DNA from: Octopus bimaculoides
Lineage: Eukaryota
Direction of reading: 5' to 3'
Length of the DNA stretch: 64,000 bases
Assembly: GCF_001194135.2 (NCBI RefSeq)
Contig: NC_068993.1
Coordinates: forward strand, 12,990,136 to 13,054,135
Shown: positions 13,515 through 26,049 of the stretch, piece after piece
Layout of the letters: every line of letters starts with the position of its first letter
Numbering within the stretch: position 1 is the stretch's first letter
The notes under the pieces: generated by a model
What the model saw: only the letters and a program-made list of their open reading frames with translations
The model's database searches: none
What the model was told of the DNA's origin: nothing
Position numbers and translations under genes: made by a program

Positions 13515-13866
13515 NNNNNNNNNNNNNNNNNNNNNNNNNNNNNNNNNNNNNNNNNNNNNNNNNNNNNNNNNNNNNNNNNNNNNNNNNNNNNNNNNNNNNN
13601 NNNNNNNNNNNNNNNNNNNNNNNNNNNNNNNNNNNNNNNNNNNNNNNNNNNNNNNNNNNNNNNNNNNNNNNNNNNNNNNNNNNNNNNNNNNNNNNNNNNN
13701 NNNNNNNNNNNNNNNNNNNNNNNNNNNNNNNNNNNNNNNNNNNNNNNNNNNNNNNNNNNNNNNNNNNNNNNNNNNNNNNNNNNNNNNNNNNNNNNNNNNN
13801 NNNNNNNNNNNNNNNNNNNNNNNNNNNNNNNNNNNNNNNNNNNNNNNNNNNNNNNNNNNNNNNNNN

Positions 13867-17640: not shown

Positions 17641-19362
17641 GCAATTTTAGTATATTCTGAACTTAGAATTTGTACTTTATTCAAATTCATTACAGACCTG
17701 TTAATAACACGAAACAGAATTATTCATAAAATGCAGGTGTATATTTTGATAGTAAGTGTAGGAGAAAAAATATATATCATTCCCTCAAGCCTTAGTAGTT
17801 AATTAAATCTATATGGCAAGAAAATATGAGTTTAAACTTTCTTTAAAATAACTTTTCAGCTTATAACCAACTCCTTCAGAAAAGATGTTTATCTATAAAA
17901 GAGAAAGCGCTGAAAAATACTAACTGCCTGGTAACAGCTGAACGCCAAACGTTTCGGTTCTAATTTTCTAATTTTTCCTTGTTTATCGATTTAAGTTTTT
18001 TTTTCTCCTGCCTGTGTGCGTGCATACGTGTGGTGTAGGATGTGTGTGTGTGTGTGTGTGTGTGTGCTGTTTGTTGTTGTTATTTATTTGTTTATTTAAT
18101 TTATTTCTCTAAACTCAATAAACGGTGTTCAGGAGCAAATGTAGAATAGAAGCAAGGACGACAGATTTATGACCGAACAACATTAAGCCAAGGTATAAAT
18201 ATTTAAAACTAAGAGTCAAAATGAATTAGGAAACAAATAATAATAATAATGATAAACTCTGCGAAATAAACTAAAAAGTAAATAAAATAAATTAAAGCTA
18301 GTAAGGTGTTTAACAGGAGGGTGGGGAAGACTTGCGTGGTGGGTGGGAGAACTCGGTGATGGATGAAGAAAACAAGAGAAAAAGACAAGCGAGATGATAA
18401 TTAAAACACAACCACAGGAAAAATGAAGGGAATAAAAGATGGCCAGTTATTGAATCGAGAAAACGTTTAAATCTTTGAACAAAAACCATAAAATGTTAAT
18501 AAAACTTGTGGAAGAAGGTAAAATTAGAAAGAAGAGATAAAAAGAAAAAAAAAGAAGCATTTGAGCTAAGACATTATAAATGAGGAACGAAAGGTGATAG
18601 ATACTGATCAATAATAAGGAAAAGATATGTACACGCATATATATATATGTATATATATATATATAAGAGAAAGAGACTCGCAGAGTTACACACTCGCATA
18701 TATATATNNNNNNNNNNNNNNNNNNNNNNNNNNNNNNNNNNNNNNNNNNNNNNNNNNNNNNNNNNNNNNNNNNNNNNNNNNNNNNNNNNNNNNNNNNNNN
18801 NNNNNNNNNNNNNNNNNNNNNNNNNNNNNNNNNNNNNNNNNNNNNNNNNNNNNNNNATATATGTGAGAGACTCAAAGGCTTACACACTTTTGTATATCTA
18901 TGTATTACAGAAGTGTATAGTTGTGTGTATGTATATTTGGATTTACATGGGAGAGAAAGTGTTCCCAATACATATATCAGGTGTTAGTTAATACTTTATT
19001 GAAAGCTGAAACTTCTCTTTGACGCTACTCCTTAGTTGCTCTGAAGAGCAGCAACGTGAAACTCAGGGTTGCGGTGTAACAAAGTGTCAGTATGGCCTCA
19101 TATGTACATGCGTTGCTATAAGTTTTTGTTTAAAAGAGAAACGAATAAAGCATTATGATTTGAGGCAAAGAAATCTGTTCACAGATAGTGTTTGCATTCA
19201 TGTATTTGAAAAATAACTCTTACAAAAGGAGTCAATTTACACACACACACACACACACGCAGATATGTGCATATATCGAAAGGATCAAACGTCCTTTCTG
19301 AGCCGTAGACACATACGGCCGGGTTCTTGCATTCTATAACTTGTTTCTCTTCGTCGATTAAT

Positions 19363-20194: not shown

Positions 20195-20940
20195 NNNNNN
20201 NNNNNNNNNNNNNNNNNNNNNNNNNNNNNNNNNNNNNNNNNNNNNNNNNNNNNNNNNNNNNNNNNNNNNNNNNNNNNNNNNNNNNNNNNNNNNNNNNNNN
20301 NNNNNNNNNNNNNNNNNNNNNNNNNNNNNNNNNNNNNNNNNNNNNNNNNNNNNNNNNNNNNNNNNNNNNNNNNNNNNNNNNNNNNNNNNNNNNNNNNNNN
20401 NNNNNNNNNNNNNNNNNNNNNNNNNNNNNNNNNNNNNNNNNNNNNNNNNNNNNNNNNNNNNNNNNNNNNNNNNNNNNNNNNNNNNNNNNNNNNNNNNNNN
20501 NNNNNNNNNNNNNNNNNNNNNNNNNNNNNNNNNNNNNNNNNNNNNNNNNNNNNNNNNNNNNNNNNNNNNNNNNNNNNNNNNNNNNNNNNNNNNNNNNNNN
20601 NNNNNNNNNNNNNNNNNNNNNNNNNNNNNNNNNNNNNNNNNNNNNNNNNNNNNNNNNNNNNNNNNNNNNNNNAAGCGCCACGGCTCATTAAATGTACATT
20701 TAGAGCGCGTGCGTGTATGTGGGTGCATGTGTGAGTGTGTTGACCGATGGTGGGTAGAGAACGAGAGAAAGTGGGGGGAAAAGAGAAAGATGGAGAAAAG
20801 AATTAGAAAAAGAGGGAGAGAGGGGAAGCGAAAGTCTATAATGAATAGATAAAAATATAAAATATTTCTTTCCTAATATATATGGTCATTATAATATCAT
20901 TATAGCGATGTGATAAAGCAATGACAAAGAGGACAAGAAC

Positions 20941-21520: not shown

Positions 21521-22653
21521 CCTTTTTCTAATCTAGGACGCGTAGCTGTAGATATTCTTGTCTACTGTATTATATTTTATGGAAGCTGAAATGATTTCAC
21601 AAACTATAACTCAGAGTTTCACATAAATTATCATCTGACAGTTGTGAGATAAACTATTGCATTGCTTTAAATTTTTACGTTTGTCTGACGTCTTGTCACG
21701 TGATACTCTGAGTAACAGTTTGTGAAGCCTTATCAGCTTCAATGACATATTTTACTGTACCTCTTTTATTCGAGTACTAATTTCTCCCTGTTTTGCATCT
21801 ATGTCTTCATATCTGCCTCATTGAGTGAAACAGCAGTAAGAGATTTTCCTTACCTATCACGGCTGTTCTATGCTTTTTTTAAATATTTTTGTACTCTTTA
21901 TTATGAAATTAATATTCTCGAGCAACGCCAAATGCTTTTTGTTCATCTTCCATTTTTAATCTATCTATCTATCTATCTATCTATATATANNNNNNNNNNN
22001 NNNNNNNNNNNNNNNNNNNNNNNNNNNNNNNNNNNNNNNNNNNNNNNNNNNNNNNNNNNNNNNNNNNNNNNNNNNNNNNNNNNNNNNNNNNNNNNNNNNN
22101 NNNNNNNNNNNNNNNNNNNNNNNNNNNNNNNNNNNNNNNNNNNNNNNNNNNNNNNNNNNNNNNNNNNNNNNNNNNNNNNNNNNNNNNNNNNNNNNNNNNN
22201 NNNNNNNNNNNNNNNNNNNNNNNNNNNNNNNNNNNNNNNNNNNNNNNNNNNNNNNNNNNNNNNNNNNNNNNNNNNNNNNNNNNNNNNNNNNNNNNNNNNN
22301 NNNNNNNNNNNNNNNNNNNNNNNNNNNNNNNNNNNNNNNNNNNNNNNNNNNNNNNNNNNNNNNNNNNNNNNNNNNNNNNNNNNNNNNNNNNNNNNNNNNN
22401 NNNNNNNNNNNNNNNNNNNNNNNNNNNNNNNNNNNNNNNNNNNNNNNNNNNNNNNNNNNNNNNNNNNNNNNNNNNNNNNNNNNNNNNNNNNNNNNNNNNN
22501 NNNNNNNNNNNNNNNNNNNNNNNNNNNNNNNNNNNNNNNNNNNNNNNNNNNNNNNNNNNNNNNNNNNNNNNNNNNNNNNNNNNNNNNNNNNNNNNNNNNN
22601 NNNNNNNNNNNNNNNNNNNNNNNNNNNNNNNNNNNNNNNNNNNNTATATACAC

Positions 22654-24430: not shown

Positions 24431-24735
24431 ATATTTGATTTTGTTTTTATACTGTATAGCGTGAATGAGATTTGTCTAGTATTTCTAGCATGCTGGCTTG
24501 CCATATAGAAGTTACGGCGAGGTCAAAGCATACTCGGCTAGGTTTCAAACTCAATACTTCGAAAATATAAACAAATCGTTCAGTCGAGAATATTGTGTCG
24601 TAGATACTAACAAATACTTAGAATATATCCTATTATATAACAGTCTTGTAAGTAATCATATCATATTTCTAACCATTTTGTATGTATATATGTATAATAT
24701 TGGTATTTATGTCTTTTTTTTTCTTTCTTTTGCAG

Positions 24736-24786
24736 GTAAGTACGCAGAAGCATTTTTGTCATCTTTATTGCCAAAATTAAAATCAG
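24736..24786 (+). other. Candidate recursive splice site (CAG|GTAAGT) with a 51-nt cryptic exon or microexon
   Basis: Branch-like TTCTAAC near 24667 and a ~20-nt pyrimidine tract, then GCAG|GTAAGT at 24735/24736. A second donor CAG|GTAGGC lies at 24786/24787. Only phase 1 is open: (G)KYAEAFLSSLLPKLKS(G). Confidence 0.5.
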
Positions 24787-25082
24787 GTAGGCTGATTTCT
24801 GACGTTTAAAATAACAGGAACAAAATAGCTGCGTTATTATTGTATATGTGTATGTGTGTCTATGTGTGTAGAAAGCAATTTTAAAAAAACAGCTTTGGCC
24901 CGTTTGATTCGATAGGTCTGTATCACTGCCCTTTTGTGTTTGTAATGCTTCCGTAACCCTTAAGAACCTTATGAACTTTCGCATGCGAATTAACCCGAAG
25001 TCATTTTTAGAGTTTAAGGGAGATGATCCCGACAAAACTCTTATTTAAAGGATCTCATTTAAAGATCAGAACGAAATTGTAA

Positions 25083-25084
<2 letters not shown>

Positions 25085-25169
<85 letters not shown>

Positions 25170-25170
25170 C
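25085..25170. repeat. (CA)n microsatellite
   Basis: CA run seen directly. Confidence 0.95.
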
Positions 25171-25371
25171 ACAATCTTTGTATCAGATAATTCAAGAAGA
25201 ATTGTAGAAAAAAGTAACTGTGTCACATTTTAAAGTTTTACATTTATACATTTATTATTGCTATTTATTATATTATAAATATTTATACTTTATACCTGTT
25301 CTCTATAGCTGTTACGCTAACACTATAAATTTCAATATTACATACATTATAACATAATATTGTATAATTAA

Positions 25372-25590
25372 TAGCCGGCGAAATGGCCGAAAGCGTCATA
25401 ACTCGCTGCGATCTCATTTAAATTCCAACCGTGGATATCTTTGCCTTTCATCATTTGCTCTAATGATGACAACGTACCAGTCATGGGTGGTTGATTTTAA
25501 AAACAAGATGCCTTTCTATATTTGATTCGGCTCTTTGTGTTCTGATTTCAAATCCCGCCAAAGCCGACATGTGCGCTTGATCCGTCTCTA
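25372..25590 (+). mobile_element. Two degenerate SINE family A-like fragments
   Basis: 'ttaaattccaaccgtggatatctttgcctttcatc' and 'gttctgatttcaaatcccgccaaagccgac' resemble the B-box region of family A. Confidence 0.45.
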
Positions 25591-26049
25591 GGTTTAACAT
25601 CACAACCTTGCAGGTTCCATGCCTTTAACGGAGTCCTTGACACAAACATTTGGCCAAGTTTCCACATTGAGTATCACTGACCAATCTCACCGGCCTTGTA
25701 AAGGGTAATTGTGCATTGACTTACCTTTTGATTAGAATATTGAAATACTGATTAGAATAATTAAAATATTTCATTATTGTTACTATGTAATCATATTATT
25801 CTTATATACTACGGTATTGCAAAAAATTGTAACTATATAATATAAATATGTGTGCGCGTTACTTCACTATATTTTTACGATATATTATATTTATATATTG
25901 ATAAATTATATCCATATATCTCTATACACCGCAATACATTATTTATTACATGTAAATATAAATCACATTATTAATATATTTTACGATATTGCATTCAAGT
26001 TTTTGACTTATTCTTCTCTTGATATTTGAAGGAGCAAAATTTCCAAAAT

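What the first reader, a model, noticed from the sequence alone, without database searches (positions are those of the whole stretch)
24660..24792. Candidate recursive splice site (ratchet point) with a 51-nt cryptic exon, or an unannotated microexon
Seen: TTCTAAC (~24667), the tract gtctttttttttctttctttt, then GCAG|GTAAGT, so a strong acceptor is immediately followed by a consensus donor. A second donor CAG|GTAGGC follows 51 nt later. The 51-nt segment is a multiple of 3 and open only in phase 1 (GKYAEAFLSSLLPKLKSG). Established: Drosophila and vertebrate long introns use AG|GT recursive sites that need a short downstream cryptic exon for definition. Inference: the window may lie in a giant + strand intron removed stepwise, with optional inclusion of a 17-aa exon. 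I do not know of this being characterised in cephalopods.
Basis: partly seen in the sequence, partly recalled or inferred. Interest (0 to 1): 0.8.

Follow-up and report, generated by a model that had tools for sequence, protein, structure and literature searches.

The report
Used intronic splice acceptor fused to donor
A splice acceptor directly followed by a perfect splice donor, deep in a long intron of what looks like an octopus gene, is really used in RNA from two studies and a sister species, which fits stepwise (recursive) intron removal, but the second step was not seen.

Summary
A 20-nt pyrimidine tract is followed by CAG(24735)|GTAAGT(24736), and a second donor, CAG|GTAGGC, lies 51 nt further on. 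The composite motif is expected 0.02 times per window. The bare 8-mer AGGTAAGT and the "open frame" are at chance level.

RNA evidence:
- **Acceptor use.** Assembled RNA contigs from five runs in two studies join an exon that is not in the window (…AATGTCTTGATCTTGCTTTCG) exactly to 24736. A sister-species RNA contig starts exactly at 24736.
- **+51 donor.** Every such contig reads straight through 24786|24787. No use of that donor was seen.
- **Coverage step.** RNA 31-mer coverage is 2-5 times higher in the 10 kb downstream of the site than in the 10 kb upstream. A run that behaves like genomic DNA is flat (0.72 vs 0.71).
- **Transcript ends.** No poly(A) end appears within 2 kb.

By the field's working criteria (motif, junction reads, sawtooth coverage) this looks like a recursive splice site with a cryptic 51-nt exon. 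The defining second step, re-splicing from the regenerated GTAAGT, was not observed. A long alternative last exon is not excluded. The optional 17-aa microexon has no support here.

Verdict: partly supported. It would be a new member of a known kind, in a phylum for which the searched open-access papers describe no recursive splicing.

The parts
24667..24673 (+). Candidate branch point TTCTAAC. The branch A is at 24672, 63 nt upstream of the AG. A weaker alternative is TTTAT with its A at 24709, 26 nt upstream.
   Evidence: Sequence and motif scan. The 81-nt AG-free zone from 24653 to 24733 is compatible with a distant branch point. Not tested by lariat reads.
24712..24731 (+). Polypyrimidine tract, 20 of 20 C/T.
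   Evidence: The other 11 AG|GTRAG sites in the window have 4-12 of 20.
24734..24735 (+). 3' splice site AG. The splice junction lies between 24735 and 24736.
   Evidence: RNA contigs join 20-29 nt of sequence absent from the window (…AATGTCTTGATCTTGCTTTC) to 24735/24736. X17 and X18. X13, X15 and X16. An organism B RNA contig starts exactly at 24736.
24736..24741 (+). GTAAGT, the putative recursive (ratchet-point) 5' splice site. It reads CAG|GTAAGT before splicing and TCG|GTAAGT after joining to the upstream exon.
   Evidence: Sequence and the junction contigs. Its use as a donor was NOT observed.
24736..24786 (+). 51-nt segment, a candidate cryptic recursive-splicing (RS) exon. It is in frame with the 29 nt seen of the upstream exon (…LLKCLDLAFG|KYAEAFLSSLLPKLKSG).
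   Evidence: The open frame is at chance level. T>C at 24756 is synonymous in organisms B and D. Organism B has a 1-nt deletion at 24764.
24787..24792 (+). Downstream donor-like site CAG|GTAGGC, the presumed exon-definition donor.
   Evidence: Sequence. All junction contigs read through it without a branch, so no use was seen.
24807..24809 (+). TAA stop in the read-through frame (…KLKSGRLISDV*). It matters only if the segment is a terminal coding exon.
   Evidence: The codon is TGA in organism B.
24736..26760 (+). RNA-covered stretch downstream of the site. It is colinear with the genome, with no joints and no poly(A) ends. By 31-mer shares, coverage continues across 24736-34735.
   Evidence: contigs; (31-mer shares).
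25085..25162 (.). (CA)39 microsatellite. It breaks all assemblies, and contig depth in study P5 falls 4-6 fold across it.

Best explanation
The site is a recursive splice site (ratchet point) inside a long intron of a + strand gene.

Shown:
- The acceptor at 24735|24736 is spliced to an upstream exon that lies at least 24.7 kb away, outside the window.
- That splice places the exon end …TCG directly against GTAAGT, which recreates a strong 5' splice site.
- Molecules spliced there are still unspliced at the +51 donor and further downstream.
- RNA coverage is several-fold higher downstream of the site than upstream.

Inferred:
- The 51-nt segment with its CAG|GTAGGC donor serves only to define the site as an exon.
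- The regenerated GTAAGT is then used as the donor to remove the rest of the intron, so the 51 nt do not reach the mRNA.
For: 1. Motif. The composite motif is unique in the window, with 0.02 expected.

2. Junction contigs. Five runs from two independent studies of organism A carry the junction. In X17 and X18, contigs of 345 and 347 nt at depth about 5 hold 29 nt of upstream exon plus 24735-25050/25053. In X13, X15 and X16, contigs of 392-394 nt at depths 33, 121 and 30 hold 20-21 nt of the same exon plus 24735 into the CA repeat. In X17 and X18 the first 31-mer is the first word that leaves the upstream exon, which suggests that the exon also has another continuation in those runs.

3. No branch at 24786|24787 in any of these contigs. 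If the 51 nt were a regular exon of a mature mRNA, its spliced form should outnumber the read-through.

4. Coverage step. Shares of 31-mers held, downstream 10 kb versus upstream 10 kb:
- X25: 0.49 vs 0.10
- X18: 0.43 vs 0.08
- X17: 0.19 vs 0.02
- X13: 0.68 vs 0.34
- X15: 0.65 vs 0.26
- X12 (a run that behaves like genomic DNA): 0.72 vs 0.71
. Locally, 24470-24735 has no coverage of its own in X15, X16, X17, X18, X20 and X25 (only short repeat-derived pieces lie at 24679-24731), while 24736 onward is covered.

5. Coverage continues downstream. Contigs are colinear with the genome at 25147-26760, with no poly(A) loose ends. There is no AATAAA before 27267.

6. Sister species. An organism B RNA contig starts exactly at 24736 and also reads through the +51 donor. 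Organism B run X27 holds 0.14 of the downstream words against 0.06 upstream.

7. Three deep RNA-seq runs of 2026 had 0 reads on 24470-24850 in about 12 million reads each. So nothing stable was seen there in those samples.

8. The field's working criteria are junction reads from a 5' splice site to an intronic AGGT plus a sawtooth (PMC6110457). Cryptic RS-exons that are defined and then skipped are described in PMC8605326.
Against: - The decisive second step is missing. There is no junction from the upstream exon to a downstream exon, and no lariat starting at 24736.
- The gene and its other exons were not identified, so 'inside an intron' is shown only for the upstream side.
- In study P5, contig depth falls 4-6 fold between 24736-25106 and 25147-26137 (121 to 19 to 9 in X15). 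That is steeper than a sawtooth over a long intron. It could mean that many molecules end near the CA repeat.
- All informative data are assembled contigs with no strand, a flat mean depth and rare variants dropped. The library types of these runs are not on record.
- The zero in the raw-read runs cannot be calibrated, because expression of the host gene in those samples is unknown.
Confidence: 0.5

Rival explanations
1. Alternative last exon, through intronic polyadenylation or a long 3' UTR. The acceptor at 24736 opens a terminal exon that adds …GKYAEAFLSSLLPKLKSGRLISDV* and then runs on as untranslated sequence. GTAAGT at its start is a coincidence.
For: - The contigs read through the +51 donor, and the frame closes at TAA 24807-24809.
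- In study P5 the first ~370 nt are 4-6 times deeper than the next 1.6 kb.
- The X17 and X18 contigs end at nearly the same place, 25050 and 25053.
- The frame is continuous with the 29 nt of the upstream exon.
Against: - No poly(A) loose end appears in any organism A contig.
- Contigs of study P5 are continuous across 24735-25106 and 25147-26137.
- No AATAAA occurs before 27267, and the only ATTAAA near the start (24776) is read through.
- In study P6, depth is flat (about 5) from the junction out to 26.7 kb.
- About half of all 31-mers over 10 kb downstream are held by X18 and X25, so a 'UTR' would need to exceed 10 kb.
- A random exon starting with GTAAGT right after a 20/20 pyrimidine tract is a priori rare.
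- Three deep RNA-seq runs had 0 reads there.
Confidence: 0.22
2. Ordinary or tissue-regulated 51-nt coding cassette microexon (17 aa). It would be included through the 24786|24787 donor in tissues not sampled here. On this reading, the read-through contigs are just nascent RNA waiting for a long downstream intron to be removed.
For: - The segment is 51 nt, frame-preserving, and open in the frame that continues the upstream exon.
- The one substitution shared by organisms B and D inside it (24756 T>C) is synonymous.
- The precedent is the Ubx m1/m2 pair, which are 51-nt RS microexons that are partly included (PMC8605326).
- This reading is compatible with recursive splicing rather than exclusive of it.
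Against: - There is no joint at 24786 in any run, even at depth 121.
- Depth over the segment equals the depth of the flanking intron.
- The open frame is at chance level, 0.49.
- Organism B has a 1-nt deletion at 24764, making the segment 50 nt (low depth of 2.6).
- A search of 5.8 billion protein clusters found no protein sharing even three 5-residue words with LLKCLDLAFGKYAEAFLSSLLPKLKSG.
Confidence: 0.13
3. Splicing noise. A chance motif is occasionally picked up as a cryptic acceptor and has no role in processing the intron.
For: By composition, many such motifs must exist by chance in a genome of gigabase size. Conservation in sister species is no higher than in the flanks.
Against: - The junction is the only assembled path into 24736 in five runs from two studies, at depths up to 121.
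- It appears to be used in a sister species as well.
- The 10-kb coverage step implies that most transcripts, not a few, splice there.
Confidence: 0.05

Closest known systems
Drosophila intronic ratchet points with cryptic RS-exons (Burnette 2005, Duff 2015, Joseph 2018 as cited in PMC8605326; Pai 2018, PMC6110457)
   Same: - A pyrimidine tract is followed by AG|GTAAGT deep in a long intron.
- Junction reads run from the upstream exon to the AGGT.
- RNA coverage steps up at the site.
- A short downstream segment ends in a second donor, here 51 nt. The Ubx-RP and chinmo cryptic exons are 53 and 56 nt.
- That donor is not seen in products.
   Different: - The organism appears to be a cephalopod mollusc rather than an insect.
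- The segment is frame-preserving, whereas fly cryptic RS-exons are 'generally out of frame'.
- The second splicing step and ultraconservation of the acceptor-donor motif are not shown here.
Ultrabithorax microexons m1 and m2 (Hatton et al. 1998, as described in PMC8605326)
   Same: Each is a 51-nt, frame-preserving (17-codon) exon inside a very long intron. It begins with a regenerated donor, so that after joining to the upstream exon it can be kept or respliced out.
   Different: Ubx m1 and m2 are included in a subset of mRNAs and are ultraconserved at all 51 positions. Here no inclusion was seen, and a sister species may carry a frameshifting deletion.
Vertebrate RS-exons (Sibley 2015; Blazquez 2018, PMC6224609)
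   Same: [quoted passage not shown] The two donors then compete.
   Different: Most vertebrate RS-exons are annotated exons kept in the mRNA through exon-junction-complex repression of the recursive donor. Here the exon is unannotated as far as the protein search shows, and it is not seen in mature form.
Alternative terminal exons from intronic polyadenylation
   Same: An intronic acceptor is followed by sequence colinear with the genome. The frame closes within 24 codons.
   Different: No poly(A) signal or poly(A) end lies within 2 kb, coverage persists over 10 kb, and a consensus donor is fused to the acceptor.

Membership tests
Recursive splice site (intronic ratchet point) | Juxtaposed 3' and 5' splice sites: pyrimidine tract, AG|GTRAGT | tested here: met
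   CAG|GTAAGT with 20/20 pyrimidines. It is the only such site in the window, with 0.02 expected.
Recursive splice site (intronic ratchet point) | Lies inside a long intron of a gene transcribed on the same strand | tested here: inconclusive
   The upstream side is shown. The joined exon is absent from the 24.7 kb upstream, and the junction orientation fixes the + strand. No downstream exon was identified, so the 3' end of the intron was not seen.
Recursive splice site (intronic ratchet point) | Junction reads from an upstream exon's 5' splice site to the intronic AGGT (the intermediate) | tested here: met
   Five runs from two studies of organism A. An organism B contig starts exactly at 24736. 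These are assembled contigs, not raw reads.
Recursive splice site (intronic ratchet point) | Sawtooth: RNA density lowest just upstream of the site and highest just downstream | tested here: met
   A coarse test only. 31-mer shares downstream vs upstream are 0.49/0.10, 0.43/0.08, 0.19/0.02, 0.68/0.34 and 0.65/0.26, and 0.72/0.71 for a run that behaves like DNA. Locally, coverage goes from zero to covered at 24736. No per-base profile from raw nascent reads was available.
Recursive splice site (intronic ratchet point) | The regenerated 5' splice site is used: a lariat with its 5' end at the site, and a mature junction from the upstream exon to a downstream exon without the RS-exon | not testable with these tools
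   The upstream and downstream exons are outside the window or unidentified. Contigs carry no lariats.
Recursive splice site (intronic ratchet point) | A downstream cryptic exon with its own donor, needed for exon definition | tested here: inconclusive
   CAG|GTAGGC lies at +51. Whether it is needed is untested, and its use was never seen.
Recursive splice site (intronic ratchet point) | The acceptor-donor motif is conserved above its flanks | tested here: inconclusive
   The motif is intact in organisms B and D, but the whole 24516-25073 stretch is about 95% identical. The species are too close to tell.
Expressed RS-exon or cassette microexon (Ubx m1/m2 type) | The exon is present in mature mRNA through its own 3' donor | tested here: not met
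   No joint at 24786|24787 in X13, X15, X16, X17, X18, X20, X25 or X26. Caveat: contigs drop rare variants, and few tissues were sampled.
Expressed RS-exon or cassette microexon (Ubx m1/m2 type) | Coding constraint: frame preserved and conserved | tested here: inconclusive
   The segment is 51 nt and open in phase with the upstream exon, but the chance of that is 0.49. There is one synonymous change, and a 1-nt deletion in organism B at depth 2.6. No protein in the database contains the peptide.
Alternative terminal exon (intronic polyadenylation) | Poly(A) signal and cleavage site, with transcripts ending in poly(A) | tested here: not met
   No AATAAA at 24736-27266. ATTAAA at 24776 is read through. 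Contigs are continuous at 24735-25106 and 25147-26137 without A-tails. The only A-run end, in organism B at 24879, abuts a genomic A7 run.
Alternative terminal exon (intronic polyadenylation) | Coverage ends at the exon's 3' end | tested here: inconclusive
   Study P5 shows a 4-6 fold drop across the CA repeat. Study P6 is flat out to 26.7 kb, and 31-mers persist over 10 kb.

The most novel reading that the evidence does not exclude
Recursive splicing operates in cephalopods. This would be the first ratchet point shown in a mollusc or any lophotrochozoan. It removes a giant intron in steps and carries a frame-preserving 51-nt RS-exon that parallels the fly Ubx microexons. That would imply the mechanism is ancestral to bilaterians and may be widespread in the very long introns of cephalopod neural genes.
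Probability: 0.5. Interest if true: 0.6.

Novelty: new member of a known kind. Interest (0 to 1): 0.45.

Why it matters
As far as the papers read here report, recursive splicing has been documented in flies and in vertebrates (PMC8605326, PMC6110457, PMC6224609). In the searched open-access library, no paper combines 'recursive splic*' with 'octopus'. The few hits for 'cephalopod' or 'mollus*' are incidental.

A validated site there would extend the mechanism to a third major animal lineage. It would also give a concrete locus, with a junction tag (TTTTGCTTAAATGTCTTGATCTTGCTTTCG|GTAAGT), for testing how such introns are processed.

Even on the rival readings, the finding marks an unannotated splice acceptor that is really used, and a transcript form that appears to be missing from the protein databases.

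Tried and rejected
- **Read laying on a wider stretch.** After that only microsatellite-free stretches could be used. This prevented scanning the window for the downstream exon.
- **Gene identification by protein search.** The 27-aa junction peptide was too short. Padded with X, it found no protein sharing three 5-residue words. I spent no further searches on this.
- **Exon hunting by ORFs.** ORF lists and stop-to-stop open segments on the + strand showed only microsatellite and repeat translations. No convincing coding exon lies in the window.
- **Upstream exon in the window.** No match at up to 2 mismatches.
- **Rfam.** No family reached its gathering score anywhere in the window, so the highly covered 24736-25106 segment is not a known structured RNA.
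- **Repeat scan.** It returned only microsatellites and N-run artefacts.
- **Coding-frame argument.** Rejected as evidence after simulation gave 0.49.
- **Conservation argument.** Rejected as uninformative, because exon and flanks are equally similar in the sister species.

Full report
**1. The observation.**

- TTCTAAC lies at 24667-24673.
- An unbroken 20-nt pyrimidine run lies at 24712-24731, followed by gCAG ending at 24735.
- GTAAGT lies at 24736-24741.
- The 51-nt segment is 24736-24786 and ends in CAG.
- GTAGGC starts at 24787.

How far this exceeds chance:
- The bare 8-mer AGGTAAGT occurs once on each strand. That is what base composition predicts (my estimate).
- With the pyrimidine tract added, this is the only site on either strand. 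The expectation is 0.02 per window.
- Its 20/20 pyrimidines compare with 4-12 of 20 for the other eleven AG|GTRAG sites.
- An 81-nt AG-free zone precedes the AG. That is compatible with the distant CTAAC branch point, whose A is at 24672.
- The 'multiple of three, open in one frame' point carries no weight. In simulation, 49% of random GTAAGT-led 51-mers of local composition are open in some frame.

The window itself is AT-rich and dense in microsatellites. It has 15 N-runs and no convincing coding exon on the + strand.

**2. The acceptor is used.**

Run identities are coded, and most library types are not on record. Where I call a run RNA, that rests on the tool's guess plus the spliced contigs themselves.

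- In two runs of study P6 (X17, X18), a 345/347-nt contig at depth about 5 consists of 29 nt that are not in the window (TTTTGCTTAAATGTCTTGATCTTGCTTTC) followed by 24735-25050/25053.
- In three runs of a second study, P5 (X13, X15, X16), a 392-394-nt contig at depths 33, 121 and 30 carries 20-21 nt of the same foreign sequence. It then runs from 24735 into the CA repeat at 25085.
- The foreign sequence does not occur in the window at up to 2 mismatches. The joined exon is therefore more than 24.7 kb upstream, unless it hides in an N-run.
- The break falls exactly at AG|G. The minus strand offers no GT-AG reading, so the transcript is on the + strand.
- In X17 and X18 the contig's first 31-mer is the first word that leaves the upstream exon. 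This suggests the exon also has another continuation in those runs.
- In a sister species (organism B, about 94% identical here), an RNA contig starts exactly at 24736. That is expected where spliced and unspliced paths converge.

**3. The +51 donor is not seen in use.**

- Every contig that enters at 24736 reads straight through 24786|24787 without a branch. This holds at depth 121, and also in organism B.
- Depth over the 51 nt equals the depth of the following sequence.
- A regular exon of a mature mRNA should be far deeper than its flanking intron, and the assembly should fork at its donor.
- Contigs can drop rare variants, so rare inclusion is not excluded.
- In the read-through frame the peptide would be …LLKCLDLAFG-KYAEAFLSSLLPKLKSG-RLISDV, followed by a stop at 24807-24809.
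- A search of 5.8 billion protein clusters found nothing sharing even three 5-residue words with the junction peptide.
- Organism B shows a 1-nt deletion at 24764, which would make the segment 50 nt long. This rests on a contig of depth 2.6.

**4. Coverage steps up at the site.**

Share of sampled 31-mers held by each run, 10 kb downstream versus 10 kb upstream:

| Run | Downstream | Upstream |
|---|---|---|
| X25 | 0.49 | 0.10 |
| X18 | 0.43 | 0.08 |
| X17 | 0.19 | 0.02 (background level) |
| X13 | 0.68 | 0.34 |
| X15 | 0.65 | 0.26 |
| X19 | 0.59 | 0.26 |
| X16 | 0.56 | 0.21 |
| X27 (organism B) | 0.14 | 0.06 |
| X12 (behaves like genomic DNA) | 0.72 | 0.71 |

- Locally, 24470-24735 has no coverage of its own in six of the RNA runs; only short repeat-derived pieces lie at 24679-24731. 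From 24736 onward the sequence is covered.
- X13 and X19 also hold the unspliced precursor at low depth.
- Downstream, contigs colinear with the genome cover 25147-26760 in study P5 and, in patches, 25406-26724 in study P6. They show no joints and no poly(A) loose ends.
- There is no AATAAA before 27267.

This is the pattern expected when most transcripts splice at 24736 soon after it is made and then carry on being transcribed.

**5. Interpretation.**

The field identifies recursive sites by three things: the motif, junction reads from an upstream 5' splice site to an intronic AGGT, and a sawtooth in nascent RNA (PMC6110457). In the current model, a short cryptic RS-exon is first defined by a downstream donor and spliced to the upstream exon. 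It is then removed because the regenerated ratchet-point donor wins (PMC8605326; PMC6224609).

- This site meets the motif and junction criteria, and the sawtooth criterion at coarse resolution.
- After splicing, the junction reads TCG|GTAAGT. By my own reading against the donor consensus CAG|GTAAGT, that is seven contiguous matches, from -1 to +6.
- The competing donor CAG|GTAGGC mismatches the consensus at +4 and +6.
- I therefore take recursive splicing as the best explanation, with a confidence of 0.5.
- The confidence is no higher because the defining second step was not observed. I saw neither a lariat from 24736 nor a mature junction that skips the 51 nt.

**6. What does not fit, and the rivals.**

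- In study P5, depth falls 4-6 fold between 24736-25106 and 25147-26137, and then about halves again in X15 and X16. In X15 the series is 121, 19, 9.
- That is too steep for a sawtooth over a long intron.
- It could come from internal oligo-dT priming at the A-run at 25208 in a 3'-biased library. That is speculation, because the library type is unknown.
- It could also mean that many molecules end near the CA repeat, which favours an alternative last exon (confidence 0.22).
- Against that rival: study P6 shows no drop, no poly(A) end or canonical signal is present, and coverage persists over 10 kb.
- A regulated coding microexon (0.13) remains possible in unsampled tissues, and it is compatible with recursive splicing.
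- Pure splicing noise (0.05) is unlikely, given the depth, the two studies and the sister species.

**7. Comparison with known systems, and novelty.**

- The closest known systems are the Drosophila intronic ratchet points and, strikingly, the two 51-nt frame-preserving Ubx microexons m1 and m2, which are handled by resplicing.
- This site differs from them in three ways. The organism appears to be a cephalopod. No inclusion was seen. No conservation above the flanks could be shown, because the sister species are about 95% identical across the whole stretch.
- In the searched library, no paper pairs 'recursive splic*' with 'octopus'. The hits for 'cephalopod' and 'mollus*' are incidental.
- If confirmed, this is a new member of a known kind in a new phylum. 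That is useful but not astonishing, since the mechanism is already shared by flies and vertebrates.
Species names are coded in the tools, so I did not verify it independently.

Noticed in passing
window 24841-24870: A TG-rich 30-mer (tgtatatgtgtatgtgtgtctatgtgtgtag region) matches, with 1-3 mismatches, dozens of 31-nt contigs. Summed depth over these positions reaches the hundreds to thousands in RNA-type runs of all four organisms examined, far above the local transcript. This looks like an abundant dispersed or expressed repeat family.
   Followed up: no
window 24736-25106 versus 25147-26760: In study P5 (X13, X15, X16) contig depth drops 4-6 fold across the (CA)39 repeat at 25085-25162. In study P6 it stays flat at about 5. 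This is unexplained. Possible causes are internal priming at the A-run near 25208, partial termination, or a library effect.
   Followed up: partly
upstream exon (outside the window), about 21 nt before its 3' end: Contigs of study P5 begin 20-21 nt before the junction, whereas contigs of study P6 begin 29 nt before it. A break in the assembly at …TTA|AATG… could reflect a polymorphism or an RNA-editing site in the upstream exon, or it could be only an assembly tip.
   Followed up: no
window 24764 (organism B contig): The sister-species RNA contig has TT where the window has TTT, which makes the '51-nt' segment 50 nt. It also has TGA instead of TAA at 24807-24809. Contig depth is only 2.6.
   Followed up: partly
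window 24880-24889: The organism B contig ends in nine A's exactly where the window has TTTAAAAAAA. Organism D lacks 4 nt here, which gives GCAATAAAAAAC and so creates an AATAAA. The run of A's could be an internal priming site or a lineage-specific poly(A) signal.
   Followed up: no
window 2359-2633, 13515-13866, 18708-18856, 20195-20672, 21990-22644, 27463-27794, 28976-29386, 30569-30864, 50377-50569, 57002-57299, 60687-60984 and four short runs: Fifteen N-runs total 3,783 nt. Nearly all are flanked by TA, CA or TG microsatellites, so they are probably assembly gaps or masking inside long simple repeats.
   Followed up: no
window 35209-35448, 37281-37627, 42951-43121, 47927-48130, 55786-55900 (+ strand frames): Similar peptide strings recur in translation (…VDYIDP…, …GQSI…PR…NLNSERK…). 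This points to a dispersed, SINE-like repeat family with several copies in the window.
   Followed up: no
window 56790-57731: A tandem array with a unit of about 59 nt (…TGTTCGTTTTGGGTTCCTGTATGTGTG… with TA/TG tracts), at least 15 copies, interrupted by an N-run.
   Followed up: no
window 25725, minus strand: This is the only other AG|GTAAGT in the window (aaaag|GTAAGTCA). It has 12 of 20 upstream pyrimidines. The RNA contigs lying over it have no direction, so no RNA evidence could be assigned to the minus strand.
   Followed up: no
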